64,000 nucleotides of DNA, taken from Cyanophora paradoxa CCMP329. Taxonomy: Eukaryota > Plantae > Glaucophyta. The stretch spans positions 372,001-436,000 of the forward strand of contig QPMI01000535.1 of assembly GCA_004431415.1 (NCBI GenBank), read 5' to 3'. Under the pieces are notes generated by a model. It did not search any database. It was not told the DNA's origin and saw only the letters and a program-made list of their open reading frames with translations. Of this stretch, positions 5,744 to 61,397 are shown in pieces (within the stretch, counting starts at the first letter, position 1; every line of letters begins with the position of its first letter). Made by a program: the position numbers and the translations under genes.

Positions 5744-6052
5744 CTCGGAAAAGACGATGATCCCGTTCCCGTCCGTATCAAACTCGTTGATCATGTTTCT
5801 GCACAGCCGCCGCGGCCGCGGCGCATTATTAATTGCACGTCACCACACAAGTAGGAAGCCTAAGGAATTTCGAATGCATTCGCGAACGCATACGTACTGG
5901 ATCTCGGCGTCCGTGGGAGTCTGGCCGTAAGATGCCATGACCGCGACGATTTCGGCTTTGGTCATGGAGCCGTCTCCGTTGGTGTCGAAGTTGCTGAACG
6001 CATCCGCGATCTCAGAGATCTGCTCTTCGGTGAACTGCCCCGTCGATGCCAT
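5744..6052 (-). pseudogene. Calmodulin-like EF-hand gene, N-lobe only (downstream exons not found)
   Basis: MASTGQFTEEQISEIADAFSNFDTNGDGSMTKAEIVAVMASYGQTPTDAEIQ, intron, NMINEFDTDGNGIIVFSE, then a GT donor with no recognisable next exon. Confidence 0.7.
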
Positions 6053-33424: not shown

Positions 33425-36400
33425 CAAGATCCGTGCTCCTGCGGAGCACTAAGTACGGCGAAGCCTCGCGGACGCCCTCGCGGCTGTCATAGTAGGCCTA
33501 TGTATAGGGCACTCAGCGACTGGCCAGCGGCCTGGCCGATCGCGAACAGCTTTCTGCAGCTGGCTGGAAGCTGGCTGGCTGACGGCCAGTCCAGCTAGCG
33601 CTGGCCGGCTAGAGGAATATTAATTTACTGAGGAAATAAAGGCTAGGGTGGAGCAGATTGAGAAGAGATTAATTATAATATTGTTGGGAAGGAGGCCCGG
33701 GAGGGGCGAGGTTGTCGCGGCCAGGCGCATGCACAGAGCTTGCGAATCGCTTAAACAGAATCTCGCGATCGAATGCATATAGCATTGATGTGCGGGGCTG
33801 CGGAGGCGAGGGCGCGCGGAAAGACGTGCAGGTCCATGCAGGATCGAATTTTCGGGGTCGGCTGGATTCTCGCGCCCTGTCGCGTCCTCGGAGCTCGCGA
33901 AAAGCTTAACAAAGATCTCAAATTACTATTGTAGCGATGCGCACGCGCGAGGATGCGAGGGCGCGCGGAAAGCTGTGCAGGTCCGTCCAGGATCGAATTT
34001 TCGGCGTCGGCTCGCGGCCCGGCACATCTGCAATGCGTGCGGAAGGCTTTGTCTACATCTGAAATGCTTATCATATTGTTCCGCGCATGCGCCGCGGCGT
34101 TGGCGCACGGAAAGATGTCCGGGTCTGTTCAGAATCGATTTTTTACCGTCGGCTGGGTTGTCGTGCTCTTCCGCGTCTTCAAAGCTTGTGGAAGGCTTCA
34201 AAAAAATGTGAAATGAATATTGTAGCGATGCGCATGCGCGAGGATGCGAGCGCGCAAGAAAAGGTCTTCAGGTCTGTAGAGGATCGAATTTTCGGGGTCG
34301 GCTGGGTCCTCGCGGCCCGGCGCATACGCAAAGCGTGCGGAAGGCTTCTTCTACATCTCAAATGCTTATGCTATTCTTCCGCGCATGTGCCGCGGCGCGG
34401 GCGCGCGGAAAGATGTCCGGGCTGTGCAGGATCGAATTTTTGCCACCGGGAGCCTTCCTGCGCTGTTCCGGCTCCGAAAAGCGGATCGCTGGAGTGCGCA
34501 GGTCCTGCTATGTCTATGCGCGCCCGTACGCATCGATTGCGCACGTCGCGGGACCGGCCGGAACCGGCCGGATCAAATTTTCGGCCGACTCTTCGCACTG
34601 GAGCGTCGAGGGTGCCCGAAATCGAGCCTGCCGCGATGCGCTCGCGCTCGCGCGTCATTCTGTATCGTTCTGGGGCGTCCCTGGCGCGATTTCGTCGCGG
34701 GACCGGGCGGGACCGGGTCCCACCTTCTGACTCGGACTGCATGTGTCGGAGGTTAAGTACCGGAATTGATCCAGAGGGAAATTCGATTTTCGCGCGACGC
34801 CCACGGGAGAGCGGTCGTCTTAGGGGAGCCAGGACGCTAAAAATGGATGTAGAGGGGTCTGTGGGGGTTCGGGCAGCTGTGTAATGTCCATCAATCGCGT
34901 CTGTGTCGAGGCAGAATTAATAATTCTGCCTCGAGGGAGTGTGACACGGAAATTATTTAGCAGGGGGGATCTTGAGTGGAAAAAAAGGTTAAAAAAGGAA
35001 TTTCGGTCGGCGGTTTTTGGGTTTGAGACAAGATCCGTGCTCCTGCGGAGCACTAAGTACGGCGAAGCCTCGCGGACGCCCTCGCGGCTGTCATAGTAGG
35101 CCTATGTATAGGGCACTCAGCGACTGGCCAGCGGCCTGGCCGATCGCGAACAGCTTTCTGCAGCTGGCTGGAAGCTGGCTGGCTGACGGCCAGTCCAGCT
35201 AGCGCTGGCCGGCTAGAGGAATATTAATTTACTGAGGAAATAAAGGCTAGGGTGGAGCAGATTGAGAAGAGATTAATTATAATATTGTTGGGAAGGAGGC
35301 CCGGGAGGGGCGAGGTTGTCGCGGCCAGGCGCATGCACAGAGCTTGCGAATCGCTTAAACAGAATCTCGCGATCGAATGCATATAGCATTGATGTGCGGG
35401 GCTGCGGAGGCGAGGGCGCGCGGAAAGACGTGCAGGTCCATGCAGGATCGAATTTTCGGGGTCGGCTGGATTCTCGCGCCCTGTCGCGTCCTCGGAGCTC
35501 GCGAAAAGCTTAACAAAGATCTCAAATTACTATTGTAGCGATGCGCACGCGCGAGGATGCGAGGGCGCGCGGAAAGCTGTGCAGGTCCGTCCAGGATCGA
35601 ATTTTCGGCGTCGGCTCGCGGCCCGGCACATCTGCAATGCGTGCGGAAGGCTTTGTCTACATCTGAAATGCTTATCATATTGTTCCGCGCATGCGCCGCG
35701 GCGTTGGCGCACGGAAAGATGTCCGGGTCTGTTCAGAATCGATTTTTTACCGTCGGCTGGGTTGTCGTGCTCTTCCGCGTCTTCAAAGCTTGTGGAAGGC
35801 TTCAAAAAAATGTGAAATGAATATTGTAGCGATGCGCATGCGCGAGGATGCGAGCGCGCAAGAAAAGGTCTTCAGGTCTGTAGAGGATCGAATTTTCGGG
35901 GTCGGCTGGGTCCTCGCGGCCCGGCGCATACGCAAAGCGTGCGGAAGGCTTCTTCTACATCTCAAATGCTTATGCTATTCTTCCGCGCATGTGCCGCGGC
36001 GCGGGCGCGCGGAAAGATGTCCGGGGCTGTGCAGGATCGAATTTTTGCCACCGGGAGCCTTCCTGCGCTGTTCCGGCTCCGAAAAGCGGATCGCTGGAGT
36101 GCGCAGGTCCTGCTATGTCTATGCGCGCCCGTACGCATCGATTGCGCACGTCGCGGGACCGGCCGGAACCGGCCGGATCAAATTTTCGGCCGACTCTTCG
36201 CACTGGAGCGTCGAGGGTGCCCGAAATCGAGCCTGCCGCGATGCGCTCGCGCTCGCGCGTCATTCTGTATCGTTCTGGGGCGTCCCTGGCGCGATTTCGT
36301 CGCGGGACCGGGCGGGACCGGGTCCCACCTTCTGACTCGGACTGCATGTGTCGGAGGTTAAGTACCGGAATTGATCCAGAGGGAAATTCGATTTTCGCGC

Positions 36401-38623
36401 GACGCCCACGGGAGAGCGGTCGTCTTAGGGGAGCCAGGACGCTAAAAATGGATGTAGAGGGGTCTGTGGGGGTTCGGGCAGCTGTGTAATGTCCATCAAT
36501 CGCGTCTGTGTCGAGGCAGAATTAATAATTCTGCCTCGAGGGAGTGTGACACGGAAATTATTTAGCAGGGGGGATCTTGAGTGGAAAAAAAGGTTAAAAA
36601 AGGAATTTCGGTCGGCGGTTTTTGGGTTTGAGACAAGATCCGTGCTCCTGCGGAGCACTAAGTACGGCGAAGCCTCGCGGACGCCCTCGCCGCTGTTACA
36701 GTAGGCCTATATATATAGGGCACTCAGCGACTGGCCAGCGGCCTGGCCGATCGCGAACAGCTTTCTGCAGCTGGCTGGAAGCTGGCTGGCTGACGGCCAG
36801 TCCAGCTAGCGCTGGCCGGCTAGAGGAATATTAATTTACTGAGGAACTAAAGGGTGGAGCAGATTGAGAAGAGATTAATTATAATATTGTTGGGAAGGAG
36901 GCCCGGGAGGGGCGAGGTTCTCGCGGCCAGGCGCATGCACAGAGCTTGCGAATCGCTTAAACAGAATCTCGCGATCGAATGTATATAGCATCGATGTGCG
37001 GGGCTGCGGAGGCGAGGGCGCGCGGAAAGACGTGCAGGTCCATGCAGGATCGAATTTTCGGGGTCGGCTGGATTCTCGCGCCCTGTCGCGTCCTCGGAGC
37101 TCGCGAAAAGCTTAACAAAGATCTCAAATTACTATTGTAGCGATGCGCACGCGCGAGGATGCGAGGGCGCGCGGAAAGCTGTGCAGGTCCGTATACGTAC
37201 AGGATCGAATTTTCGGGGTCGGCTGGGTCCTCGCGGCTCGGCGCATACGCAAAGCGTGCGGAAGTCTTTGCCTACATCTCAAATGCTTATGCTATTGTTC
37301 CGCGCATGCGCCGCGGCGTGGGCGCGCGGAAAGATGTCCGGGTCCGTGCAGGATCGAATTTTTGCCGTCGGCTGGGTTCTCGTGCTCTTTCGCGTCTTCG
37401 AAGCTTGTGGAAGGCTTTGATAAAATCTCAAATGAATATTGTAGCGATGCGCATGCGCGAGAATGCGAGGGCGTGCGGAAAGATGTTCAGGTCCGTACAG
37501 GATCGAATTTTCGGGGTCGGCTGGGTCCTCGCGGCCTGGTGCATTTAGAGACCGTGCGGAAGTCTTCTTCTACATCTAAAATGCATATGCTATCGTTCCG
37601 CGCATGCGCCGCGGCGTGGGCGCGCGGAAAGATCTCCGGGCCTGTCTAGGATCGAATTCTTGCCGTCGGGTATGTCCAGGATCGAATTTTTGCGTCGGCT
37701 GGGTTCTCGTGCCCTGTCGCGCCTGCAGAGCTTGCGAAAAGCTTTAAAAAGGAGTCAACTGAAAATTGTAGCGATGCGCTCGCGTGAGGATGCGAGGGCG
37801 CGCGGAAAGTTGTGCAGGTCCGTCCAGGATCGAATTTCCGGGGTCGGCTGGGTCCTCGCGGCCCGGCGCATTTAGAGACCGTGCGGAAGGCTTCTTCTAC
37901 ATCTCAAATGCTTATGCTATCGTTCCGCGCATGCGCCGCGGCGCGGGCGCGCGGAAAGATCTCCGGGCCTGTCTAGGATCGAATTTTTGCCGTCGGGTAC
38001 CTTCCTGCGCTCTTCCGGCTCCGAAAAGCGGATTTCGGGGGTGCGCAGGCGCTGCTATGTCTATGCGCGCCCGTACGCATCGATTGCGCGCGTCGCGGGA
38101 CCGGCCGGAACCGGCCGGATCAAATTTTCGGCCGACTCTTCGCACTGGAGCGTCGACGGCGCGCGAAATCGGGTTTGCGGCGATGCGCTCGCCCTCGCGC
38201 GTCATTCTGTATCGTTCTGGGGCGTTCCTGGCGCGATTTTGTCGCGGGACCGGGCGGGACCGGGTCCCACCTTCTGACTCGGACTGGATTTGTCGGAGGT
38301 TAAGAACCGGAATTGATCCAGAGGAATATTCGATATTCGCGCGACGCCCACGGGAGAGCGGTCGTCTTAGGGGAGCCAGGACGCTAAAATTGGCTCTAGA
38401 GAGGTCTGTGGGGGTTCGGGTGGCTGTGTGACTAGCAGCAATCGCGTCTGTGTCGAGGCAAAATTAATAATTCTGCCTCGAGGGAGTGCGACACGGAAAT
38501 TATTTAGCAGGGGGGATCTCGAGTGGAAAAAAAGGTTAAAAAAGGAATTTAGATCGTCGGTTTTTGGGTTTGAGAAAGAGGCTTCGCCTGAAAGAGGCTT
38601 CGCCTGAAAGAGGCTTCGCCTGA
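33425..38623 (-). mobile_element. Trimer of a non-autonomous Helitron/Helentron-like element
   Basis: Bodies 33425-35028, 35029-36633 (near identical) and 36634-38575 (diverged, longer), plus three stacked 16-bp 5' ends at 38576-38623. Element strand: 5'-TCAGGCGAAGCCTC ... GAGGCTTCGCC-GTACTTA-GTGCTCCgcaGGAGCAC hairpin-GGATCTTG-3'. Flanks A|T, no TSD. Confidence 0.85.
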
Positions 38624-38774
38624 TAAGCCTTGAAGATTCCATTTTTTAGATTTAGCATTCTCAGCAGATTAAATTAAGCTTAGGTTACAGACTTAATTCC
38701 AGTTACGTATACGAAGTAATATTAATATAAGCTAAGCCGCCTAGGTGACCGACGCGTACCGCGGCGTATACGTA

Positions 38775-39013
38775 CTGTAAACGTAGAAATTTTCGTCGAG
38801 ACTTAATTTCGACAAAACCCGAAAATCGTGACGAAAATATGGTTCGACAGCATCAAATTTTCGTCAGCCCCGCGACTCCGCCATAGACGGGTCAGCCGCT
38901 AGTATCCTTCTCCATACAAAATTTTCGTTCAAGAGTATCAAATATTCGTCAACGTGCAGGTCTGACGAATATAGACGAAATAAAGACGCTGTCGAAGATT
39001 CCTACGTTTGCAG
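38775..39013. mobile_element. TA-flanked MITE (Tc1/mariner-like)
   Basis: TA|CTGTAAACGTAGAAATTTTCG ... CGAAGATTCCTACGTTTGCAG|TA (3 mismatches), with internal AAATTTTCGTC/GACGAAAAT motifs. Confidence 0.7.
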
Positions 39014-39275
39014 TACGGCGGTCCGACGCCGGCTTACCACCGTGGCACTTAAAAAAGGTCCGAGTCCCGTCCGACGGTCCACTTTTAAATTAAAGTTTTG
39101 CGGAGTCCGTGAATCGTGTATATAGTGGCCCATATATCGATCAACTTAAAACTTAAAAACGTGCACGTGACACATATATATAGCTCTTAATTAGCTACTA
39201 ATAGGCTAGTAATAGCTATAGCTGCCGCCGGGCGCCGCGGCGCTGCCGCGCCGCGCCGACGCGCCGTGCCACGGC

Positions 39276-42200
39276 CAGGGATGTGAAAATTATTGAGGGT
39301 CCCCCGAGGGTCCAAAAATTATGGCGATAATTTTTGCCTTGTATGTATAATTTATGGAAAATTATGGGAAAAATTATGCCATACAAAGCGGAAAAGTTTC
39401 GTCGCTCAGCCTTGTTTCGTTGCTCAGAAGCATTATATGCATGTTAGAGTGCTTTATTGACTCTCAGAGATATGTCCTGGGCCGCTAATGACGCTCTGGA
39501 GCAAGGATGGCTGGGTGACAGCGGGGGGGGTAGGGGCTCTTAGAGGGGGGAAGAGGCGCCGACGCACCTCACATTCAGCACCCGCAAAGCAGCCTTATTT
39601 GCTTTCAATACATTGTACATCTATCTTATAACGTTTAGAGGCGCCAGGGGGGTGTCCTCTAAAAATCAGGCGAAGCCTCTTTCAGGCGAAGCCTCTTTCT
39701 CAAACCCAAAAACCGCCGATATAAATTCCTTTTTTAACCTTTTTTTCCACTCGAGATCCCCCCTGATAAATAATTTCCGTGTCGCACTCCCTCGAGGCAG
39801 AATTATTAATTCTGCCTCGACACGGTCACGATTGCCGCTAATGACTCAGCTACCCTAACCCCCACACACCTCTCTAGATCCATTTTTAGCGTCCTGGCTC
39901 CCCTAAGACGACCGCTCCCCCGTGGGCGTCGCGCGAATATCAAATTTCCCTCTGGATCAAATCCGGTCCTTAACCTCCGACAAATGCAGTCCAGGTCAGA
40001 AGGTGGGACCGGGTCAGGCGAAGCCTCTTTCTCAAACCCAAAAACCGCCGATATAAATTCCTTTTTTAACCTTTTTTTCCACTCGAGATCCCCCCTGATA
40101 AATAATTTCCGTGTCGCACTCCCTCGAGGCAGAATTATTAATTCTGCCTCGACACGGTCACGATTGCCGCTAATGACTCAGCTACCCTAACCCCCACACA
40201 CCTCTCTAGATCCATTTTTAGCGTCCTGGCTCCCCTAAGACGACCGCTCCCCCGTGGGCGTCGCGCGAATATCAAATTTCCCTCTGGATCAAATCCGGTC
40301 CTTAACCTCCGACAAATGCAGTCCAGGTCAGAAGGTGGGACCCGGTCCCGCCCGGTCCCGCGACGAAATCGCGCCAGGGACGCCCCAGAACGATAAAGAG
40401 TGACGGGCGAGGGCGAGCGCATCGACGCAAGCTCGATTTCGGGCGCCGTCAACGCTCCAGTCCGAACAGTAGGCCGAAAATTTGATCCGGCCGGTTCCGG
40501 CCGGTTCCGCGAGGCGCGCATTCGATGCGTACTGGCGCGCATAGACATAGCAGGGCCTGCGCACCCCCGAAATCTGCTTTTCGGAGCCGGAATAGCGCAA
40601 GAAGGTACCGGACATCAAAAATTCGATCCTGCACAAACCTGGACAGCTTTCCGCGCGCCAACGCCGCGGCGCATGCGCGGAACGATAGCATAAGCATTTG
40701 AGATGTAGACAAAGCATTCCGCACGGTCTCTAAATGCGCCGGGCCGCGAGGACCCAGCCGACGCCGAAAATTCGATCCTGGACGGACCTGCACAGCTTTC
40801 CGCGCGCCCTCGCATCCTCACGCGTGCGCATCCCTACAACAGTAGTTTGAGATCTTTGTCAAGCTTTTCGCGAACTCTAGAGATGCGACAGGGCGCGAGA
40901 ATCCAGCCGACCCGAAAATTCGATCCTGGCCAGGCCTGCAAAGCTTTCCGTGTGCCCTTGCCTCCGCACCCCTGCACATCGATGCTATATGCATTCTAGA
41001 TTCTGTTTAAGCGATTCCCAAGCTCTGTGCATGCGCCTGGCCGCGAGAACCTCGCCCCTCCCAGGCCCGGCGGCCTCCCTCCCAACAATATTATATAGTT
41101 AATCTCCTCTCAATCTGCTCCACCAGTTAAAAGCAAGCGTTACCGGTTCAACTCCGGTCTCCCCTAGTTAATTATATATTCCCTCTCCTCATTACATTGC
41201 TCTCTGGCCAGCCAGCTCTCCCTCGAGCTGGCTAAAGCGGGCCAGCCCATGGCCGGTGCCAAGCCGGCGAAACCCGGCCATGCAGCTGGGCGGGGCCGGG
41301 TCCAGCTGGCCTCCTACTGTGACAGCCGCGAGGGCGTCCGCGAGGCTTCGCCGTACTTAGTGCTCCGCAGGAGCACGGATCTTGTCTCAAACCCAAAAAC
41401 CGCCGACCGAAATTCCTTTTTTAACCTTTTTTTCCACTCAAGATCCCCCCTGCTAAATAATTTCCGTGTCACACTCCCTCGAGGCAGAATTATTAATTCT
41501 GCCTCGACACAGACGCGATTGATGGACATTACACAGCTGCCCGAACCCCCACAGACCCCTCTACATCCATTTTTAGCGTCCTGGCTCCCCTAAGACGACC
41601 GCTCTCCGTGGGCGTCGCGCGAAAATCGAATTTCCCTCTGGATCAATTCCGGTACTTAACCTCCGACACATGCAGTCCGAGTCAGAAGGTGGGACCCGGT
41701 CCCGCCCGGTCCCGCGACGAAATCGCGCCAGGGACGCCCCAGAACGATACAGAATGACGCGCGAGCGCGAGCGCATCGCGGCAGGCTCGATTTCGGGCAC
41801 CCTCGACGCTCCAGTGCGAAGAGTCGGCCGAAAATTTGATCCGGCCGGTTCCGGCCGGTCCCGCGACGTGCGCAATCGATGCGTACGGGCGCGCATAGAC
41901 ATAGCAGGACCTGCGCACTCCAGCGATCCGCTTTTCGGAGCCGGAACAGCGCAGGAAGGCTCCCGGTGGCAAAAATTCGATCCTGCACAGCCCGGACATC
42001 TTTCCGCGCGCCCGCGCCGCGGCACATGCGCGGAAGAATAGCATAAGCATTTGAGATGTAGAAGAAGCCTTCCGCACGCTTTGCGTATGCGCCGGGCCGC
42101 GAGGACCCAGCCGACCCCGAAAATTCGATCCTCTACAGACCTGAAGACCTTTTCTTGCGCGCTCGCATCCTCGCGCATGCGCATCGCTACAATATTCATT

Positions 42201-43092
42201 TCACATTTTTTTGAAGCCTTCCACAAGCTTTGAAGACGCGGAAGAGCACGACAACCCAGCCGACGGTAAAAAATCGATTCTGAACAGACCCGGACATCTT
42301 TCCGTGCGCCAACGCCGCGGCGCATGCGCGGAACAATATGATAAGCATTTCAGATGTAGACAAAGCCTTCCGCACGCATTGCAGATGTGCCGGGCCGCGA
42401 GCCGACGCCGAAAATTCGATCCTGGACGGACCTGCACAGCTTTCCGCGCGCCCTCGCATCCTCGCGCGTGCGCATCGCTACAATAGTAATTTGAGATCTT
42501 TGTTAAGCTTTTCGCGAGCTCCGAGGACGCGACAGGGCGCGAGAATCCAGCCGACCCCGAAAATTCGATCCTGCATGGACCTGCACGTCTTTCCGCGCGC
42601 CCTCGCCTCCGCAGCCCCGCACATCAATGCTATATGCATTCGATCGCGAGATTCTGTTTAAGCGATTCGCAAGCTCTGTGCATGCGCCTGGCCGCGACAA
42701 CCTCGCCCCTCCCGGGCCTCCTTCCCAACAATATTATAATTAATCTCTTCTCAATCTGCTCCACCCTAGCCTTTATTTCCTCAGTAAATTAATATTCCTC
42801 TAGCCGGCCAGCGCTAGCTGGACTGGCCGTCAGCCAGCCAGCTTCCAGCCAGCTGCAGAAAGCTGTTCGCGATCGGCCAGGCCGCTGGCCAGTCGCTGAG
42901 TGCCCTATACATAGGCCTACTATGACAGCCGCGAGGGCGTCCGCGAGGCTTCGCCGTACTTAGTGCTCCGCAGGAGCACGGATCTTGTTTTCTATAAATT
43001 ATGGATGGCCGAAACCGGGGGCAAAAATTATCCCATAATTATTCGAAAAATTATGGAATACTTTTTCCATAATTTATGGGCGGCGAACCCTG
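39276..43092. mobile_element. hAT-like non-autonomous element interrupted by a Helitron-like array (second copy 48464-49117)
   Basis: CAGGGATGTGAAA...AACCCTG ends; many subterminal AAATTAT(G) motifs; no 8-bp TSD. Confidence 0.5.
39666..42987 (+). mobile_element. Helitron-like array: stacked 5' ends, partial B, full B (40014-41384), A body (41385-42987)
   Basis: Same termini as the trimer. The empty site in the duplicated unit (CCTCTAAAAA|TTTTCTAT, 49012/49013) shows precise insertion with no TSD. Confidence 0.9.
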
Positions 43093-44689
43093 CTAGCTGG
43101 CCGTATTGTGGATCTTCGCTTGAAAAATAATTTTTTGGGCGGAGAGGGGATACCGGTTTCCAAGGGAGGGGTACAGCACTCTGAAACGAAGCGAAACTGG
43201 ACTGCCTGCAGAATCCAGCTACCTGCAAGAGGAAACGAAACTTTCACGACACAGCGGTGTGACTGCGGCAGCTTCCACAAGTTTCGTGACTTCGAAACTT
43301 CGAAATTCAAGGCAACCGAGGCTACCTGTGTTTCGGTGCCAGTGTCACAGTACTAGTGTACTGGCCATGGCCAGTGGCCACCGTACCGTGGCACAGGCCA
43401 GTGACCGTGCCACGGTGGCACGTGCACTGTGCACAGTGTACGTACATGTGGCAGTACTAGTACTACTGTCTGTACCGGCCCGGCGGCCACGGGGCGCGAT
43501 TGGCGAATTTCGAATCGGCGGCGATTGCGGATTCGCGGCGCCTGCAGCTGCAGCTGCGCTATAGCGCTAGCGCTGCCTGCGCTGCTGCGCATGCATGCAG
43601 CGCATCATCAATGATTCATCATTAGCAGCGCAGTCGCGAGTCGAGACTCGAGAGTCGAGAGTCCGCCGGTCTGCATAGTGGCCAGCGAATCGGCGCCGCC
43701 TGCAATATGATTGATTACTATCATGGATGGCTGCAGCTGCAGCTTTCCCATCGCTTGAATTATTTTTGAATCGTTTCAAAAGCGCGGCGCTGCCGGCCGC
43801 TAGTAGGCCCGCTAGTGGGCCGCTACTGCTGGCCAGTAGTACTGGGTAGTACTGGCCCGCTAGCGCTGCATGTGCCGGCGCTGGCCCGCGGACGGCGCAG
43901 CAATCATTGAATTATTTGAATCATTGAATCATATCTCATCAATGGCTAGCTAGCTGCAGGCCTGCCGCAGGCTGCCGCCAGGCTCAGCGGCTGCGCCGCG
44001 CCAGCGCCTGCATGCGCCGGGCCGGGCGGCCCGGCCGCCCGGGCCGGGCCGGGCGGCCGGCCCGCGGGTGCCATCGAATCATTGACCATGACTGATTGCA
44101 GCTCGATGCAGGGGTACCCCGGCGGCGGCTGCGGGCGCGAGCGCGGGATCGAAAGCGAACGAAACTTCGGCGCGCGCCCCTCTTTCCAGCCGCCGTTTCA
44201 GCGTCGATGCGCACCGCAAGCTGAATCCGCAGCCGCAACTGCCCTGGCTGGCCCGGTTCTCCCGCTCTGCGAATCGCGCCCCAAGGCCGGCTCGCCCGCC
44301 CTCGCCGCCCGGCGCGCCTGCGCGAAGCACAGCCCGACCTCGGCCTGCATGCGCCGTTTTCCAACGATCGGCTCTCGTCAAGCGCGCTCCGGCGTCTCGT
44401 CGCCGCGCCCGCCAACGCGCTCGCCCCACGACGACCCAGACCTTTACGTCCAGCCGCATCATCCGACCTTTCTGGCTCGCCGCCGCGCTTCTCGGTGCGT
44501 ATCCTTGCCTTCGGAAGGCCTCTGCGCCCGCCACGAGGCCTCCGGCGCGTGTTCGCAGTTGACGTCTCCAAGTTGCAGGTCACCGCCTCAGCTGCCCCGC
44601 GCGCCATGCGCTTTCCGCCTCCGCGAACGTGCAGCACGCGCAGGGCTCGGCATTCTGGCGATTCGCCGCCCGCGCCGCCGCGCTCCTGG

Positions 44690-45255
44690 CGGACCGCCCC
44701 AGCGGCCCCCCACGAATCGCGCCCCCGCTCCCGCCGCAGCTGCTCCGCTGCCCCTCGCCGACGGCGCAATTCGCCGCCGCTGGACCCACGCTCGCTCTCT
44801 CCAGGCCCGCCGCCCGCTCCGCAGCCTTTCTGGCGGGCCGCCCCAGCGGCCCCCCACGAACCGCGCCCCCGCTCCCGCCGCAGCTGCTCCGCTGCCCCTC
44901 GCCGACGGCGCAATTCGCCGCCGCTGGACCCACGCTCGCTCGCTCCAGGTCCGCCGCCCGCGCCGCAGCCTTTCTGGCGGGCCGCCCCAGCGGCCCCCCA
45001 CGAACCGCGCCCCCGCTCCCGCCGCAGCTGCTCCGCTGCCCCTCGCCGACGGCGCAATTCGCCGCCGCTGGACCCACGCTCGCTCGCTCCAGGTCCGCCG
45101 CCCGCGTCGCAGCCTTTCTGGCGGGCCGCCCCAGCGGCCCCCACGAATCGCGCCCCCGCTCCCGCCGCAGCTGCTCCGCTGCCCCTCGCCGACGGCGCAG
45201 TTCGTCGCCGCTGGACACACGCTCACTCGCTCGAGGTCCGCCGCCCGCGCCACGC
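44690..45255. repeat. 144-bp GC-rich tandem repeat, ~4 copies (also ~53710-54276)
   Basis: AGCGGCCCCC anchor at 44701, 44845, 44989 and 45133. Confidence 0.9.
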
Positions 45256-47920
45256 GCATCTCAAGATGCCGTACCCTGGGGGGGACGCCCTGCGAGCGGT
45301 AGCGTGGCCGTTTCTGAGCCCGCGCTCTCGCCGCAGGCCCTCGGCGTTCGCTGCGCGTCCGGCCGGCTTCGGCGATGGGCGAGGTACGCGGAATATCGGA
45401 GGGGAGGGCGGCGGGGGGGCGGCGGGGGTAGAGGATGGGAAGGGGGTACCCCAGCGCCCCCCGCCGCGGCTCACGCTCTTCCGCAGGCCGCTCGAGCTCC
45501 ACCGGCGCGGCGTCCGCGCCCCTCTCCCTTCGCCATCAGGTGCGCTGGCGCTCGGGCCGAGGCCGGTGTTGTCGTCGGCTCCTCAGCGCCGCCCGGCCGC
45601 CCTGCGCATCCCAGAATGCCGTACCCTAGGGGCGCGCCCTGCGAGCGGTAGCGTGGCCCTTTCTGACTGCCCCGCGCTCTCGCCGCAGGCCCTCGGCGTT
45701 CGCTGCGCGTCCGGCCGGCTTCGGTGAAGTGGGAGGTACGCGGTATTTCGGGGAGAGGATGGGCGGGGGGAGGGGGAAGAGGGCCTGGGTACGCCAGCGC
45801 CCCCCGCGCGGCTCACGCTCTTCCGCAGGCCGCTCGAGCTCCACCGGCGCGGCGTCCGCGCCCCTCTCCCTTCGCCATCAGGTGCGCTGGCGCTCGGGCC
45901 GAGGCCGGTGTTGTCGTCGGCTCCTCAGCGCCGCCCGGCCACCGTGCGCATCCCAGAATGCCGTACCCTAGGGGCGCGCCCTGCGAGCGGTAGCGTGGCC
46001 CTTTCTGACTGCCCCGCGCTCTCGCCGCAGGCCCTCGGCGTTCGCTGCGCGTCCGGCCGGCTTCGGTGAAGTGGGAGGTACGCGGTATTTCGGGGAGAGG
46101 ATGGGCGGGGGAGAGGGGGAGGGGGCCTGGGTACGCCAGCGCCTCTCGCCGCAGCTCACGCTCCTCCGCAGGCCGCTCGAGCTCCACCGGCGCGGCGTCC
46201 GGCGCGTGCGCCTATCTCCCATGGCCATCGGGTGCGTTGGCGCAGGCGCTTCAGCGGCCGCCCGTCCGCCCGTCCGCCACGCGCATCTCAAGATGCCGTA
46301 TCCTGGGGGGGCGCGCCCTGCGAGCGGTAGCGTGGCCGTCTCTGAGCCCGCGCTCTCGCCGCAGGCCCTCGGCGTTCGCTGCGCGTCCGGCCGGCTTCGG
46401 CGATGGGCGAGGTACGCGGAATATCGGAGGGGAGGGCGGCGGGGGGCGGCGGGGGTAGAGGATGGGAAGGGGGTACCCCAGCGCCCCCCGCCGCGGCTCA
46501 CGCTCTTCCGCAGGCCGCTCGAGCTCCACCGGCGCGGCGTCCGCGCCCCTCTCCCTTCGCCATCAGGTGCGCTGGCGCTCGCGCCGAGGCCGGTGTTATC
46601 GTCGGCTCCTCAGCGCCGCCCGGCCGCCGTGCGCATCCCAGAATGCCGTACCCTAGGGGCGCGCCCTGCGAGCGGTAGCGTGGCCCTGTCTGACTGCCCC
46701 GCGCTCTCGCCGCAGGCCCTCGGCGTTCGCTGCGCGTCCGGCCGGCTTCGGTGAAGTGGGAGGTACGCGGTATTTCGGGGAGAGGATGGGCGGGGGGGAG
46801 GGGGAGGGGGCCTGGGTACGCCAGCGCCTCTCGCCGCAGCTCACGCTCCTCCGCAGGCCGCTCGAGCTCCACCGGCGCGGCGTCCGGCGCGTGCGCCTAT
46901 CTCCCATGGCCATCGGGTGCGTTGGCGCAGGCGCTTCAGCGGCCGCCCGTCCGCCCGTCCGCCAGGCGCATCTCAAGATGCCGTACCCTGGGGGGGCCGC
47001 CCTGCGAGCGGTAGCGTGGCCGTCTCTGAGCCCGCGCTCTCGCCGCAGGCCCTCGGCGTTCGCTGCGCGTCCGGCCGGCTTCGGCGATGGGTGAGGTACG
47101 CGGAATATCGGAGGGGAGGGCGGCGGGGGGGCGGCGGGGGTAGAGGATGGGAAGGGGGTACCCCAGCGCCCCCCGCCGCGGCTCACGCTCTTCCGCAGGC
47201 CGCTCGAGCTCCACCGGCGCGGCGTCCGCGCCCCTCTCCCTTCGCCATCAGGTGCGCTGGCGCTCGGGCCGAGGCCGGTGTTGTCGTCGGCTCCTCAGCG
47301 CCGCCCGGCCGCCGTGCGCATCCCAGAATGCCGTACCCTAGGGGCGCGCCCTGCGAGCGGTAGCGTGGCCCTTTTTGACTGCCCCGCGCTCTCGCCGCAG
47401 GCCCTCGGCGTTCGCTGCGCGTCCGGCCGGCTTCGGTGAAGTGGGAGGTACGCGGTATTTCGGGAACAGGATGGGCGGGGGGGGGGGAAGAGGGCCTGGG
47501 TACGCCAGCGCCTCTCGCCGCAGCTCACGCTCCTCCGCAGGCCGCTCGAGCTCCACCGGCGCGGCGTCCGGCGCGTGCGCCTATCTCCCATGGCCATCGG
47601 GTGCGTTGGCGCAGGCGCTTCAGCGGCCGCCCGTCCGCCCGTCCGCCACGCGCATCTCAAGATGCCGTACCCTGGGGGGGCGCGCCCTGCGAGCGGTAGC
47701 GTGGCCGTCTCTGAGCCCGCGCTCTCGCCGCAGGCCCTCGGCGTTCGCTGCGCGTCCGGCCGCGGGCCGGCTTCGGCGATGGGCGAGGTACGCGGAATAT
47801 CGGAGGGGAGGGCGGCGGGGGGCGGCGGGGGTAGAGGATGGGAAGGGGGTACCCCAGCGCCCCCGCCGCGGCTCACGCTCTTCCGCAGGCCGCTCGAGCT
47901 TCACCGGCGCGGCGTCCGGC
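45255..47920. repeat. ~343-bp satellite, 8 copies, alternating variants forming a ~685-bp higher-order unit (also ~54276-56945)
   Basis: CCTGCGAGCGGTAGCGTGGCC recurs near 45289, 45638, 45980, 46317, 46665, 47001, 47350 and 47686. Confidence 0.9.
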
Positions 47921-48544
47921 GCACGCCTCCCTCTAGGTGACAAGCGTGCCAAGTCCAGCGCAGGCCCAGCAAGGTTCGCAAGTTTTCATGTCGTCCAAAT
48001 CAGAGTGACGCCCCCTAGAGCGAGACGGCGGCGCTGCAGCCCCGATGACGGCCCTCATGATCAGGTGCCGCCGCTGGTGCCTTGTGCCGCTGTGCTCTAT
48101 ATAGCTACCCGCCCTTCATATTATTAATCTCATGCCATATGCATATGCATTTGGAACTGTGTCGATCGAGCACAGAAGTCCTCATGATCAGCTGGGGTGC
48201 GTTGGCGGCGGTCACAGATCTAGAGGCCAAGCTAACTTTCACATGTTCCACCGCACGCGAGGTGCGCGAGTCTATCTCTTGCCCGTCGCCTTTTAGAGCT
48301 AGACAGTGGGGCACCAGCCCTGGCGGGGGCTCTCAGGTGCCGTTGACGGGGGCGCTCATCCATATATATAGCTCTTAATTAGCTACTAATAGGCTAGTAA
48401 TAGCTATAGCTGCCGCCGGGCGCCGCGGCGCTGCCGCGCCGCGCCGACGCGCCGTGCCACGGCCAGGGATGTGAAAATTATTGAGGGTCCCCCGAGGGTC
48501 CAAAAATTATGGCGATAATTTTTGCCTTGTATGTATAATTTATG

Positions 48545-48692
48545 TCGTGCTACGACCTCCCGGATTCCCGGGTTCGGTTCCTGCTGTTTCCGCTACGTTG
48601 TACTTCGAATCCCTGTGATTCCCGATACCGTGACTTGTATCCTCGTTGTGTACTACGAGTGGGCACGCCCACCGTAGATCTTTAAAAAAAAA
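48545..48692 (+). mobile_element. 148-bp retroposed insertion (SINE or 5'-truncated LINE tail)
   Basis: A9 tail; 11-bp TSD TATAATTTATG at 48534-48544 and 48693-48703; absent from the paralogous site near 39350; 3' hairpin GTGGGCacGCCCAC. Confidence 0.85.
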
Positions 48693-49155
48693 TATAATTT
48701 ATGGAAAATTATGGGAAAAATTATGCCATACAAAGCGGAAAAGTTTCGTCGCTCAGCCTTGTTTCGTTGCTCAGAAGCATTATATGCATGTTAGAGTGCT
48801 TTATTGACTCTCAGAGATATGTCCTGGGCCGCTAATGACGCTCTGGAGCAAGGATGGCTGGGTGACAGCGGGGGGGGTAGGGGCTCTTAGAGGGGGGAAG
48901 AGGCGCCGACGCACCTCACATTCAGCACCCGCAAAGCAGCCTTATTTGCTTTCAATACATTGTACATCTATCTTATAACGTTTAGAGGCGCCAGGGGGGT
49001 GTCCTCTAAAAATTTTCTATAAATTATGGATGGCCGAAACCGGGGGCAAAAATTATCCCATAATTATTCGAAAAATTATGGAATACTTTTTCCATAATTT
49101 ATGGGCGGCGAACCCTGCTAGCTGGCCGTATTGTGGATCTTCGCTTGAAAAATAA

Positions 49156-52148
49156 CAAGATCCGTGCTCCTGCGGAGCACTAAGTACGGCGAAGCCTCGC
49201 GGACGCCCTCGCGGCTGTCACAGTAGGAGGCCAGCTGGACCCGGCCCCGCCCAGCTGCATGGCCGGGTTTCGCCGGCTTGGCACCGGCCATGGGCTGGCC
49301 CGCTTTAGCCAGCTCGAGGGAGAGCTGGCTGGCCAGAGAGCAATGTAATGAGGAGAGGGAATATATAATTAACTAGGGGAGACCGGAGTTGAACCGGTAA
49401 CGCTTGCTTTTAACTGGTGGAGCAGATTGAGAGGAGATTAACTATATAATATTGTTGGGAGGGAGGCCGCCGGGCCTGGGAGGGGCGAGGTTCTCGCGGC
49501 CAGGCGCATGCACAGAGCTTGGGAATCGCTTAAACAGAATCTAGAATGCATATAGCATCGATGTGCAGGGGTGCGGAGGCAAGGGCACACGGAAAGCTTT
49601 GCAGGCCTGGCCAGGATCGAATTTTCGGGGTCGGCTGGATTCTCGCGCCCTGTCGCATCTCTAGAGTTCGCGAAAAGCTTGACAAAGATCTCAAACTACT
49701 GTTGTAGGGATGCGCACGCGTGAGGATGCGAGGGCGCGCGGAAAGCTGTGCAGGTCCGTCCAGGATCGAATTTTCGGCGTCGGCTGGGTCCTCGCGGCCC
49801 GGCGCATTTAGAGACCGTGCGGAATGCTTTGTCTACATCTCAAATGCTTATGCTATCGTTCCGCGCATGCGCCGCGGCGTTGGCGCGCGGAAAGCTGTCC
49901 AGGTTTGTGCAGGATCGAATTTTTGATGTCCGGTACCTTCTTGCGCTATTCCGGCTCCGAAAAGCAGATTTCGGGGGTGCGCAGGCCCTGCTATGTCTAT
50001 GCGCGCCAGTACGCATCGAATGCGCGCCTCGCGGAACCGGCCGGAACCGGCCGGATCAAATTTTCGGCCTACTGTTCGGACTGGAGCGTTGACGGCGCCC
50101 GAAATCGAGCTTGCGTCGATGCGCTCGCCCTCGCCCGTCACTCTTTATCGTTCTGGGGCGTCCCTGGCGCGATTTCGTCGCGGGACCGGGCGGGACCGGG
50201 TCCCACCTTCTGACCTGGACTGCATTTGTCGGAGGTTAAGGACCGGATTTGATCCAGAGGGAAATTTGATATTCGCGCGACGCCCACGGGGGAGCGGTCG
50301 TCTTAGGGGAGCCAGGACGCTAAAAATGGATCTAGAGAGGTGTGTGGGGGTTAGGGTAGCTGAGTCATTAGCGGCAATCGTGACCGTGTCGAGGCAGAAT
50401 TAATAATTCTGCCTCGAGGGAGTGCGACACGGAAATTATTTATCAGGGGGGATCTCGAGTGGAAAAAAAGGTTAAAAAAGGAATTTATATCGGCGGGTTT
50501 TGGGTTTGAGACAAGATCCGTGCTCCTGCGGAGCACTAAGTACGGCGAAGCCTCGCGGACGCCCTCGCGGCTGTCATAGTAGGCCTATGTATAGGGCACT
50601 CAGCGACTGGCCAGCGGCCTGGCCGATCGCGAACAGCTTTCTGCAGCTGGCTGGAAGCTGGCTGGCTGACGGCCAGTCCAGCTAGCGCTGGCCGGCTAGA
50701 GGAATATTAATTTACTGAGGAAATAAAGGCTAGGGTGGAGCAGATTGAGAAGAGATTAATTATAATATTGTTGGGAAGGAGGCCCGGGAGGGGCGAGGTT
50801 GTCGCGGCCAGGCGCATGCACAGAGCTTGCGAATCGCTTAAACAGAATCTCGCGATCGAATGCATATAGCATTGATGTGCGGGGCTGCGGAGGCGAGGGC
50901 GCGCGGAAAGACGTGCAGGTCCATGCAGGATCGAATTTTCGGGGTCGGCTGGATTCTCGCGCCCTGTCGCGTCCTCGGAGCTCGCGAAAAGCTTAACAAA
51001 GATCTCAAATTACTATTGTAGCGATGCGCACGCGCGAGGATGCGAGGGCGCGCGGAAAGCTGTGCAGGTCCGTCCAGGATCGAATTTTCGGCGTCGGCTC
51101 GCGGCCCGGCACATCTGCAATGCGTGCGGAAGGCTTTGTCTACATCTGAAATGCTTATCATATTGTTCCGCGCATGCGCCGCGGCGTTGGCGCACGGAAA
51201 GATGTCCGGGTCTGTTCAGAATCGATTTTTTACCGTCGGCTGGGTTGTCGTGCTCTTCCGCGTCTTCAAAGCTTGTGGAAGGCTTCAAAAAAATGTGAAA
51301 TGAATATTGTAGCGATGCGCATGCGCGAGGATGCGAGCGCGCAAGAAAAGGTCTTCAGGTCTGTAGAGGATCGAATTTTCGGGGTCGGCTGGGTCCTCGC
51401 GGCCCGGCGCATACGCAAAGCGTGCGGAAGGCTTCTTCTACATCTCAAATGCTTATGCTATTCTTCCGCGCATGTGCCGCGGCGCGGGCGCGCGGAAAGA
51501 TGTCCGGGGCTGTGCAGGATCGAATTTTTGCCACCGGGAGCCTTCCTGCGCTGTTCCGGCTCCGAAAAGCGGATCGCTGGAGTGCGCAGGTCCTGCTATG
51601 TCTATGCGCGCCCGTACGCATCGATTGCGCACGTCGCGGGACCGGCCGGAACCGGCCGGATCAAATTTTCGGCCGACTCTTCGCACTGGAGCGTCGAGGG
51701 TGCCCGAAATCGAGCCTGCCGCGATGCGCTCGCGCTCGCGCGTCATTCTGTATCGTTCTGGGGCGTCCCTGGCGCGATTTCGTCGCGGGACCGGGCGGGA
51801 CCGGGTCCCACCTTCTGACTCGGACTGCATGTGTCGGAGGTTAAGTACCGGAATTGATCCAGAGGGAAATTCGATTTTCGCGCGACGCCCACGGGAGAGC
51901 GGTCGTCTTAGGGGAGCCAGGACGCTAAAAATGGATGTAGAGGGGTCTGTGGGGGTTCGGGCAGCTGTGTAATGTCCATCAATCGCGTCTGTGTCGAGGC
52001 AGAATTAATAATTCTGCCTCGAGGGAGTGTGACACGGAAATTATTTAGCAGGGGGGATCTTGAGTGGAAAAAAAGGTTAAAAAAGGAATTTCGGTCGGCG
52101 GTTTTTGGGTTTGAGAAAGAGGCTTCGCCTGAAAGAGGCTTCGCCTGA
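49156..52148 (-). mobile_element. Helitron-like dimer: two stacked 5' ends, A (52148-50512), B body (50511-49156)
   Basis: Empty site GAAAAATAA|TTTTTTGGG at 43130/43131 in the other duplicate; no TSD. Confidence 0.9.
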
Positions 52149-57469: not shown

Positions 57470-57932
57470 ATGCGCCGGCCGGCCCCCCGCGCCCGCCCCG
57501 CGCCCGCCCTGCCCGCCCGCCCGCCCCGCCCCACCCCGCGCCGCGCCGCCCCGCCCCGCCCGCCCCGCGCCGCCCGCTCCGCCCGCCCGCCCCGCCCCGC
57601 CCGCCCGCCCCGCCCGCCCCGCCCCGCCCCGCCCCGGCGCCGCCCCGCCCCGCCCCGCCCCGCCCCGCCGCGCCGCCCGCCCCGCCCCGCCCCGCCCCGG
57701 CGCCGCGCCGCCCGCCCCGCCCCGCCCCGCCGCCCCGCCCCGCCCCGCCCGCCCGCCCCGCCCCGCCCCGCCCCGCCCGCCCCGTCGCCGCCCCGCCCCG
57801 CCCCGCCCCGCCCCGCCCGCCCCGCCCGCCCCGCCCCGCCCGCCCCGCCCCGCCCCGCCCCGCCCCGCCTTGCCCCGCCCCGCCCCGCCCCGCCCCGCGG
57901 CCGCCCCGCCCTCTCCCGGGCCCTGCCCCGCC
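57470..57932. repeat. Degenerate (CCCCG)n tract, ~460 bp
   Basis: Almost pure C/G pentamer repeats, bounded by GTATGCG at 57468 and CCCAG at ~57935. Confidence 0.9.
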
Positions 57933-60109: not shown

Positions 60110-60164
60110 CGCGTCGGATGCACCCCTAGCTGGCCACGGCCCACGGTGTCAAAATTTCAATCTG

Positions 60165-61397
60165 TCAGGCGAAGCCTCTTTCTCAAACCCAAAAACCACC
60201 GCAGGCGAAGCCTCTTTCTCAAACCCAAAAACCGCCGATATAAATTCCTTTTTTAACCTTTTTTTCCACTCAAGATCCCCCCTGCTAAATAATTTCCGCG
60301 TCGCACTCCCTCGAGGACGAATTATTAATTCTGCCTCGACACGGACGCGATTGCCGCTAATGACTCAGCTACCCTAACCCCCACAGACCTCTCTAGATCC
60401 ATTTTTAGCGTCGTGGCTCCCCTAAGACGACCGCTCGCCCGTGGGCGTCGCGCGAAAATCGAATTTCCCTCTGGATCAATTCCGGTACTTAACCTCCGAC
60501 AAATGCAGTCCGAGTCAGAAGGTGGGACCCGGTCCCGCCCGGTCCCGCGACGAAATCGCGCCAGGGACGCCCCAGAACGATACAGAATGCCGCGCGAGGG
60601 CGAGCGCATCGCCGCAAGCTCGATTTCAAGCGCCGTCGACGCTCCAGTGCGAAGAGTCGGCCGAAAATTTGATCCAGCGCTAGCCGGTCCCGCCCGGTCC
60701 CGCGACGCGCGCAATCGATGCGTACTGGCGCGCATGGACATAGCAGGGCCTGCGCACCCCCGAAATCCGCTTTTCGGAGCCGGAACAGCGCAGGAAGGTA
60801 CCCGACGGCCAAAATTCGATCCTGCACGCGCCCTGACATCTTTCCGCGCGCCCACGCCGCGGCGCATGCGCGGAACGATAGCATAAGCATTTAAGATGTA
60901 GGCAAAGTCTTCCGCACGCTTTGCGTATGCGACGGGCCGCGAGGACCCAGCCGACCCCGAAAATTCGATCCTGCATGGACCTGCACATCTTTCCGCGCGC
61001 CCTCGCCTCGAGCTCCGCAGCCCCGCACATCGATGCTATAGCTATATGCATTCAAGATTCTGTTTAAGCGATTCGCAAGCTCTGTGCATGCGCCTGGCCG
61101 CGAGAACCTTGCCCCTCCCGGGCCTCCCTCTCAACAATATTATATATAATTCATCTCCTCTAATCTCAACCTGCTCCGGCCTCCCTTTATTTCCTCAGTA
61201 CATTAATATTCCTCTAGTTATATTCCTCTAGCCGGCCAGCGGTAGCTGGACTGGCCGTCAGCCGGCCAGCTTCCAACCAGAAAGCTGTTCGCGATCGGCC
61301 AGGCCGCTGGCCAGTGCCCTATAGGCCTACTGTGACAGCCGCGAGGGCGTCCGCGAGGCTTCGCCGTACTTAGTGCTCCGCAGGAGCACGGATCTTG
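60165..61397 (+). mobile_element. Monomer of the Helitron-like family (shorter subfamily, duplicated 5' ~37 bp)
   Basis: TCAGGCGAAGCCTC start; hairpin plus GGATCTTG|T end. Confidence 0.88.

What the first reader, a model, noticed from the sequence alone, without database searches (positions are those of the whole stretch)
33425..52148. Rolling-circle element that appears to insert into its own 5' end (Russian-doll arrays)
Seen: the number of stacked 16-bp 5' termini (TCAGGCGAAGCCTCTT) equals the number of complete bodies: 3 for the trimer and 2 for each dimer. Every internal body lacks exactly those 16 bp (junction CTTG|TCTCAAA at 35028, 36633, 41384 and 50511), and subfamily order differs between arrays (B-A versus A-B). 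Simple head-to-tail concatemers would keep the 16 bp at each junction, whereas repeated insertion at position +16 of a resident copy explains all four. The site lies just after the 11-bp motif complementary to the 3' subterminal GAGGCTTCGCC. Inference: site-specific self-targeting, either by transposase bound to the terminus or by DNA base-pair guiding as in IS200/IS605 HUH elements.
Basis: partly seen in the sequence, partly recalled or inferred. Interest (0 to 1): 0.8.

Follow-up and report, generated by a model that had tools for sequence, protein, structure and literature searches.

The report
Self-nesting Helitron transposon arrays
A short non-coding rolling-circle (Helitron2-type) transposon has repeatedly inserted new copies exactly 16 bases inside the head of resident copies, building tandem arrays whose stacked heads count the insertions; such self-insertion is already described in fungal Helitrons, and the new points here are the fixed site and the intact nests.

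Summary
The window has 10 copies of TCAGGCGAAGCCTCTT, 8 element 3' ends and 10 body starts. They form a trimer (3 stacked 16-mers), two dimers (2 each) and one monomer. All four internal junctions read CTTG|TCTCAAA.

Array 2 has a third 16-mer at 40014, inside a 332-bp 5' duplication. The monomer at 60165 has a 36-bp 5' duplication.

Two copies of a ~9-kb tandem duplication each give the exact empty site for the other's array. These show that the 16-mers arrive with the element, with no target-site duplication.

Nested insertion at +16 of a resident copy is the only simple model that gives N heads followed by N bodies. Four different junction pairs (B3>A, A>A, C>A, A>C) all use that one site. 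It is 50% AT, against 67-88% AT for primary sites.

How the site is chosen (bound transposase or base-pair guiding) could not be tested.

The termini are Helitron2-type and match the Fusarium FoHeli1/2 design: TCAG plus a GAA-loop hairpin. Self-insertion giving multiple 5' termini is published for those elements. The scan also noted the same nesting elsewhere in this genome (s1-509612, s1-513137). I rate it a new member of a known kind, of moderate interest.

The parts
33425..38623 (-). Array 1 (trimer): 3 stacked 16-mers followed by bodies B3, A and A
38576..38623 (-). Three stacked 16-nt 5' termini, TCAGGCGAAGCCTCTT x3
   Evidence: TRF period 16, 3.1 copies, 100% match
36634..38575 (-). Body B3 (1942 bp, extra 149-bp internal repeat units). 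It is the 5'-most body, so the youngest under the nesting model
   Evidence: about 94% identical to A
35029..36633 (-). Body A (1605 bp), starting at +17 directly after the CTTG of B3
33425..35028 (-). Body A (1604 bp), 3'-most. 3' ATIR at 33457-33467, hairpin at 33433-33449, terminal GGATCTTG at 33425-33432
39666..42987 (+). Array 2 (dimer): 2 stacked 16-mers, a 316-bp 5' fragment of C (39698-40013), a third 16-mer (40014-40029), body C (40030-41384) and body A (41385-42987)
   Evidence: 332-bp tandem duplication 39682-40347
49156..52148 (-). Array 3 (dimer): 2 stacked 16-mers (52117-52148), body A (50512-52116) and body C (49156-50511)
60165..61397 (+). Monomer with a 36-bp duplication of its 5' end (60165-60200). 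The full copy at 60201 begins GCAGG instead of TCAGG
49012..49013 (+). Exact empty site for array 2 in the sister copy of the 9-kb duplication (CTCTAAAAA|TTTTCTAT)
   Evidence: flanks 833/833 identical once the arrays are removed
43130..43131 (+). Exact empty site for array 3 in the sister copy (GAAAAATAA|TTTTTTGGG)
   Evidence: The same join (49154 to 52148, skipping 2993) is seen in contigs of runs X1, X12 and X16

Best explanation
These are non-autonomous Helitron2-type rolling-circle transposons, 1.2-2.0 kb long, with no ORF and an interior of 149-bp repeats.

Termini:
- The head is TCA, then an 11-nt inverted repeat that contains a GC-GAA-GC mini-hairpin, then TT.
- The tail is the complementary 11-mer, 7 nt, a 7-bp stem with a GCA loop, and GGATCTTG.

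What is shown:
- Primary insertion occurs at an N|T position in AT-rich DNA, with no target-site duplication.
- New full-length copies have also been inserted, in the same orientation, between positions 16 and 17 of resident copies.
- Each such event leaves the resident's first 16 nt upstream and the rest of the resident downstream. N events therefore give N+1 stacked heads followed by N+1 bodies, youngest first.

What is inferred:
- The RepHel transposase, encoded elsewhere in the genome, must bind the 5' hairpin/inverted repeat of a resident copy to start transposition.
- It also nicks the top strand 2 nt downstream of that motif. This mirrors the legitimate nick 3 nt upstream.
- That nick then serves as the integration target, so the head of every resident copy becomes a hot spot.

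The longer 5' duplications (36 and 332 bp) fit the published route: nesting further inside a copy, followed by excision from the outer head to the inner tail. Local tandem duplication is also possible.
For: - Counts and layout.
- The 16-mers belong to the insert. Two copies of the 9-kb duplication are 833/833 identical around the arrays, and each gives the exact empty site of the other, with no target-site duplication.
- Four distinct junction pairs (B3>A, A>A, C>A, A>C) use the same position. An A element has 330 N|T positions.
- Primary sites are 67-88% AT and the nest site is 50% AT. The 24 AT-rich N|T positions inside A were never used.
- All four A copies have 0 mismatches and the two C copies differ by 1. 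The host duplication is 99.7% identical, so the events are recent and separate.
- The nest-type junction (loose end CAAGATCC next to the A body start) appears in contigs of three other runs.
- The 3' hairpin folds robustly.
- FoHeli1/2 heads (TCAGCC-GAA-GGCTG and TCAGTCC-GAA-GGACTT) share the TCAG plus GAA-loop design. Those elements show multiple 5' termini ascribed to self-insertion.
- Helitron2 terminal architecture.
Against: - Only one window could be read, with four nest junctions and four primary sites. No genome-wide census was possible.
- Arrays could have arrived as pre-formed units, which would weaken the argument from in-window frequency. It would not remove the four distinct junction types.
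- No pre-nest allele (a single 16-mer plus body C at the array 3 flank) was seen in four runs. Those runs were k=31 contigs, which cannot count stacked 16-mers.
- The monomer's 36-bp duplication has an imprecise junction (C|G, or a lost T), which a clean transposase reaction does not predict.
- The 5' mini-hairpin does not fold better than shuffled sequence under nearest-neighbour DNA parameters.
- The targeting step is pure inference. No RepHel is in the window.
Confidence: 0.8

Rival explanations
1. The arrays were built elsewhere and moved into this region as composite units. Excision would start at the outermost head and read through the inner 3' ends (3'-end bypass). The in-window events would then not be in-situ nestings.
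For: 3'-end bypass and chimeric excision are accepted for Helitrons. The head of array 2, with its 332-bp duplicated unit, must have been pre-formed or duplicated locally. Two arrays entered two 100%-identical host copies within a short time.
Against: Each composite still needs an original nesting at +16, so this changes where the events happened and not what they were. The three arrays all differ in composition. Arrays outnumber monomers 3 to 1 in the window, although bypass of a perfect 3' end should be the rarer outcome.
Confidence: 0.25
2. The arrays are rolling-circle concatemers of a body-only unit (TCTCAAA...CTTG). The 16-mers are a separate mini-unit or microsatellite that expanded on its own.
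For: Both the body and the 16-mer start with TC. Rolling-circle concatemers are the usual explanation for Helitron tandem arrays.
Against: This model does not predict equal numbers, yet 3=3, 2=2 and 2=2 are seen, and 10 heads match 10 body starts. There is no solo body without a head and no solo 16-mer in the window. Heterodimers occur in both orders (C-A and A-C), which a single circle cannot produce. A circle that included the 16 nt would leave it at every junction.
Confidence: 0.04
3. The layout is an assembly artefact, or comes from transposase-independent tandem duplication or unequal crossing-over.
For: The element is high-copy (1178-2704 contigs laid per run) and its copies are identical, which invites mis-assembly. 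The 9-kb duplication could be two haplotypes placed in tandem.
Against: The junctions fall exactly at the element's 3' end and at +17 in all four cases. Nest-type junction letters occur in independent short-read contigs of three runs. The empty sites are exact to the base.
Confidence: 0.04
4. Targeting works by base pairing rather than by protein position. The incoming copy's 3' subterminal GAGGCTTCGCC would pair with the resident's single-stranded GGCGAAGCCTC, placing the cut 2 nt downstream, in the manner of IS200/IS605 guide sequences.
For: There is an 11-nt perfect complement, and the nest site lies just 3' of it. Bao and Jurka proposed that pairing of the two inverted repeats plays a role in ending replication.
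Against: The paired motif lies 32 nt from the incoming 3' end, so the geometry is not obviously right. Primary sites share no motif complementary to any terminal sequence. Nothing here tests it.
Confidence: 0.2

Closest known systems
FoHeli1/FoHeli2 (Helitron2-type) of Fusarium oxysporum, and the Metarhizium acridum tandem trimer (Chellapan et al. 2016, PMC5148889; TR4 study PMC13342296)
   Same: The head design is TCAG plus a hairpin with a GAA loop. An 11-12-nt asymmetric inverted repeat is followed by a 3' hairpin. The first T is ambiguous at the insertion site. Copies carry 2-5 repeated 5' termini, explained by self-insertion. [quoted passage not shown]
   Different: The Fusarium repeats are 31, 65, 73 or 85 nt long and mostly sit on single bodies, after chimeric excision. 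Here one fixed 16-nt site was used four times and the nests are intact, with as many bodies as heads. The elements here are non-coding, end in CTTG rather than ATATTTT, and live in a very GC-rich host genome.
Helitron2 group as defined by Bao and Jurka 2013 (for example Helitron-1N1_CRe of Chlamydomonas)
   Same: A 5' inverted repeat lies next to the end and is complementary to a subterminal 3' repeat upstream of a hairpin. The 5' hairpin lies inside that repeat. The element starts with T. Most non-autonomous copies have no target-site duplication.
   Different: The Chlamydomonas families insert between TTTT and T/C. Here the primary sites read A|T, A|T, A|T and G|T, or T|T, T|T, T|A and T|T in the other register.
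Rolling-circle concatemer arrays of Helitrons (bat, silkworm, plant centromeres; cited)
   Same: Head-to-tail arrays of whole elements in one orientation.
   Different: Concatemers should keep the complete head at every junction and contain one kind of unit. Here the junctions lack 16 nt, the heads are stacked upstream, and the arrays mix subfamilies in both orders.
Nested maize Helitrons with multiple termini (PMC3288121)
   Same: Nesting followed by excision from one copy's head to another's tail explains multiple termini.
   Different: The maize cases are canonical Helitron1 elements, mostly with multiple 3' termini, and no fixed nesting position.
IS608 (IS200/IS605) guide-directed targeting and IS91 end-directed insertion (from general knowledge, not tested here)
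   Same: HUH enzymes act on single-stranded DNA, with subterminal hairpins and insertion next to a short defined sequence.
   Different: No conserved target tetranucleotide is seen at the primary sites. The enzyme class here is RepHel, not Y1 TnpA. This is a resemblance only.

Membership tests
Helitron2 (Bao and Jurka 2013) | A short 5' inverted repeat next to the 5' end, complementary to a subterminal 3' repeat that lies upstream of the 3' hairpin | tested here: met
   GGCGAAGCCTC at +4 to +14 pairs with GAGGCTTCGCC at 33-43 nt from the 3' end, in all 8 copies. The distances (3 nt and 32 nt) fall just outside the quoted 0-2 and 20-30 nt.
Helitron2 (Bao and Jurka 2013) | A 3' subterminal hairpin | tested here: met
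   GTGCTCC-GCA-GGAGCAC lies 8 nt from the end and appears in every predicted fold.
Helitron2 (Bao and Jurka 2013) | A 5' terminal hairpin involving the 5' inverted repeat | tested here: inconclusive
   GGC-GAA-GCC can form a 3-bp stem with a GAA loop and matches the FoHeli1/2 head design. The predicted energy is no better than shuffles.
Helitron2 (Bao and Jurka 2013) | Insertion after T (T|T or T|C), usually with no target-site duplication | tested here: inconclusive
   Absence of a target-site duplication is shown by two exact empty sites. One T is ambiguous. Read as T|N, the sites are T|T, T|T, T|A and T|T, with T|C for the nest. Read as N|T, they are A|T x3, G|T and T|T.
Helitron2 (Bao and Jurka 2013) | A RepHel transposase of the Helitron2 clade | not testable with these tools
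   The elements are non-coding and no RepHel is found in the window. Scan notes place RepHel genes elsewhere in this genome.
Canonical Helitron (Helitron1) | 5' TC, 3' CTRR, no terminal inverted repeats, insertion at A|T | tested here: not met
   The 5' TC is present and A|T fits 3 of 4 sites. The 3' end is CTTG, not CTRR, and an 11-nt asymmetric inverted repeat is present.
Helitron self-insertion with multiple 5' termini (Chellapan 2016 model) | Direct repeats of the element's first nucleotides upstream of a complete copy | tested here: met
   Stacks of 3, 2 and 2 16-mers, plus 36-bp and 332-bp 5' repeats.
Helitron self-insertion with multiple 5' termini (Chellapan 2016 model) | The remainder of the interrupted resident copy follows the 3' end of the inserted copy (intact nest) | tested here: met
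   Four CTTG|TCTCAAA junctions each continue into a complete body.
IS200/IS605-type guide-directed targeting | A fixed short target sequence recognised by pairing with a guide next to the terminal hairpin | tested here: not met
   The bases left of the four primary sites (GCTTA, AAAAA, AAAAA, ATCTG) and of the nest site (CTCTT) share no tetranucleotide. The enzyme and the pairing itself are not testable here.

The most novel reading that the evidence does not exclude
In this Helitron2 lineage the head of a resident copy is the preferred integration site, defined to the base and directed by the transposase bound to the terminus. Nested self-insertion, and not rolling-circle concatemer formation, would then be the main way tandem Helitron arrays (and possibly Helitron-derived satellites) grow. 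The stack of 16-mers would be a readable counter of insertion events.
Probability: 0.4. Interest if true: 0.6.

Novelty: new member of a known kind. Interest (0 to 1): 0.4.

Why it matters
Tandem Helitron arrays are usually put down to rolling-circle concatemers. Here the stacked heads discriminate between the two routes and point to nested self-insertion. A fixed nesting position just after the 5' hairpin would be natural evidence on two things:
- how a Helitron2 transposase chooses a target, which has not been studied biochemically;
- how such elements seed satellite-like arrays.

The family is high-copy and recently active, so a genome-wide census and a transposition assay are practical.

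Tried and rejected
**Searches for more copies outside the window, all blank**
- Two metagenome scans, for the head/body boundary and the 3' end.
- One viral-contig scan.
- An exact-protein look-up of the 214-aa spurious ORF inside body A.
- Scan findings searched by sequence.

**Sequencing runs**
- The runs found were all Logan k=31 contigs of a coded organism.
- Laying four of them on array 3 showed a high-copy family, the nest-type junction and the exact empty-site join.
- It showed no pre-nest allele. These contigs cannot count stacked 16-mers or show circle junctions reliably.

**Organism and transposase**
- The attempt to place the organism with the protein atlas gave nothing.
- A Pfam scan of the ten long ORFs of the first 33 kb gave no RepHel, only a weak EF-hand match.

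**Models rejected**
- The 16-mer as a host target sequence: the empty sites lack it.
- Concatemers of a circle: these would keep the 16 nt at each junction.
- Insertion at the resident's 5' or 3' boundary: same objection.
- A simple sequence preference of the TTTT|T/C kind: the primary sites do not show it.
Full report
**What is there**

The 16-mer TCAGGCGAAGCCTCTT occurs 10 times in the window, against 0.03 expected. The 25-nt 3' end GTGCTCCGCAGGAGCACGGATCTTG occurs 8 times. The sequence that follows the 16-mer, TCTCAAACCC..., occurs 10 times. A sensitive BLAST of four full copies against the window found no other member.

Reading the sequence gives this layout:
- **Array 1** (minus strand, 38623 to 33425): three stacked 16-mers, then bodies of 1942 (B3), 1605 (A) and 1604 (A) bp.
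- **Array 2** (plus strand, 39666-42987): two stacked 16-mers, a 316-bp 5' fragment of subfamily C, a third 16-mer at 40014, then body C (1355 bp) and body A (1603 bp).
- **Array 3** (minus strand, 52148 to 49156): two stacked 16-mers, then body A (1605 bp) and body C (1356 bp).
- **A monomer** (plus strand, 60165-61397): its first 36 nt are repeated once.

It overlooked the third 16-mer of array 2, which belongs to a 332-bp tandem duplication, and the duplicated head of the monomer. The rule that covers everything is that heads equal body starts (10 = 10) and directly stacked heads equal complete bodies.

**Exact ends**

Arrays 2 and 3 lie in the two copies of a ~9-kb tandem duplication (39346-48349 against 48693-57373). 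These copies differ by 2 mismatches in 5229 aligned bases.
- With the arrays removed, 833 of 833 flanking bases are identical.
- Each copy is the exact empty site for the other's array: CTCTAAAAA|TTTTCTAT and GAAAAATAA|TTTTTTGGG.
- The inserted DNA therefore runs from TCAGG... to ...CTTG, includes the stacked 16-mers, and makes no target-site duplication.
- One T is ambiguous, so each site can be read as N|T or as T|N. The Fusarium authors note the same ambiguity.
- The empty-site join (49154 to 52148, skipping 2993) also appears in contigs of three public runs.

**What kind of element**

The element has no credible ORF, and its interior consists of 149-bp repeats.
- The head is TCA, then GGCGAAGCCTC, then TT.
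- The tail is GAGGCTTCGCC, then 7 nt, then a 7-bp stem with a GCA loop (stable in all folds), then GGATCTTG.
- This is the Helitron2 architecture of Bao and Jurka.
- It fails the canonical Helitron definition on the 3' CTRR and on the absence of inverted repeats.
- The head closely parallels FoHeli1 (TCAGCC-GAA-GGCTG) and FoHeli2 (TCAGTCC-GAA-GGACTT) of Fusarium. All share TCAG followed by a small hairpin with a GAA loop.
- No RepHel is in the window. Scan notes place RepHel genes elsewhere in the genome.

**How the arrays arose**

I went through the simple alternatives one by one.
- A rolling-circle concatemer, or insertion at either boundary of a resident copy, keeps the 16 nt at each junction.
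- A body-only unit plus an independently expanding 16-mer does not predict equal numbers. It also predicts solo bodies or solo 16-mers, and none exist here.
- The 16-mer as a host target is excluded by the empty sites.
- Insertion of a complete copy between positions 16 and 17 of a resident copy, in the same orientation, gives exactly the observed form.

Four different junction pairs (B3 into A, A into A, C into A, A into C) require four separate events, and all use one position out of 330 N|T positions in an A element. The site does not resemble the primary sites. It is 50% AT, against 67-88% AT for the primary sites, and 24 AT-rich N|T positions inside A were never used.

The four A copies have no mismatch and differ only in the length of two C runs. 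The two C copies differ by one base. The activity is therefore very recent.

Contigs from three other runs carry the letters of the nest-type junction next to an A-type body start. Between 1178 and 2704 contigs per run were laid on the 3.4-kb stretch, so the family is abundant. That figure is not a copy number.

**Mechanism of targeting (inferred)**

The nest cut lies 2 nt 3' of the 11-nt repeat and hairpin. The legitimate 5' cut lies 3 nt 5' of it. The simplest reading is that the transposase bound to a resident head also nicks on the far side, and that nick serves as the target.

No IS608-like fixed target motif is seen at the primary sites.

The 36-bp and 332-bp head duplications fit the published route of nesting followed by excision from the outer head to the inner tail. 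The 332-bp junction has a TC microhomology and the 36-bp junction is imprecise, so local duplication cannot be excluded.

**Comparison with what is known**

- Multiple 5' termini from self-insertion are described for FoHeli elements, with repeats of 31-85 nt. Up to five termini are reported in TR4 strains.
- A tandem trimer in Metarhizium acridum was explained either by insertion into the 5' end twice or by rolling-circle replication.
- Nested maize Helitrons with multiple termini are also published.
- Other papers ascribe Helitron arrays to rolling-circle concatemers.
- The scan itself noted the same +16 nesting on other pieces of this genome. The follow-up on s1-509612 called it already described in fungi, and s1-513137 is a second note.

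What this window adds is a fixed site used in four independent events, intact nests with equal numbers of heads and bodies, and exact empty sites.

**Limits**

- Only this window could be read.
- Searches of metagenome and viral collections, and an exact-protein look-up, found no further copies.
- The public runs were k=31 contigs, which cannot count the stacks or show a pre-nest allele.
- The organism is coded, and I did not identify it. I therefore could not check whether this family is already in a repeat library.

Noticed in passing
window 39346-48349 and 48693-57373: A ~9-kb tandem segmental duplication, 99.7% identical (2 mismatches in 5229 aligned bases; the remaining differences are gaps, which I take to lie largely in its repeat arrays). 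Each copy has acquired a different Helitron array at a different site and in the opposite orientation. It could also be two haplotypes placed in tandem by the assembler.
   Followed up: partly
window 44520-47920 and 53540-56940: GC-rich (about 75%) satellite blocks with 144-bp and about 342/685-bp periods inside each copy of the duplication.
   Followed up: no
window 57466-57924: A long run of a roughly 9-bp periodic, very GC-rich repeat (33 overlapping copies). It may be a coding triplet-of-three repeat or a minisatellite.
   Followed up: no
window 60075-60115: A third, inverted partial copy of the host repeat that carries the array 3 target. Its site CCCAAAAAATTATTTTTC is empty, and the monomer is inserted about 70 bp further on. 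Family members cluster in and around this host repeat.
   Followed up: partly
window 35017-35053 and 36622-36658 (minus strand): A 77-codon ORF starting at the GTG of the 3' hairpin runs across the nest junction into the next body (34820-35053 and 36425-36658). It is almost certainly spurious, but it could mislead gene callers.
   Followed up: no
window 52040-52050 (minus strand) and the equivalent place in other A copies: Subfamily A carries CAAGATCC about 80 nt from its head, the exact complement of the terminal GGATCTTG. Subfamilies C and B3 have CGAGATCC there. For an 8-mer in 1.6 kb this may be chance.
   Followed up: no
window 5840-6919 (minus strand): This was the only long ORF of the first 33 kb with a Pfam match, a weak EF-hand hit below the curated cut-off. 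The other long ORFs in the 70-77% GC stretches had no family match.
   Followed up: no
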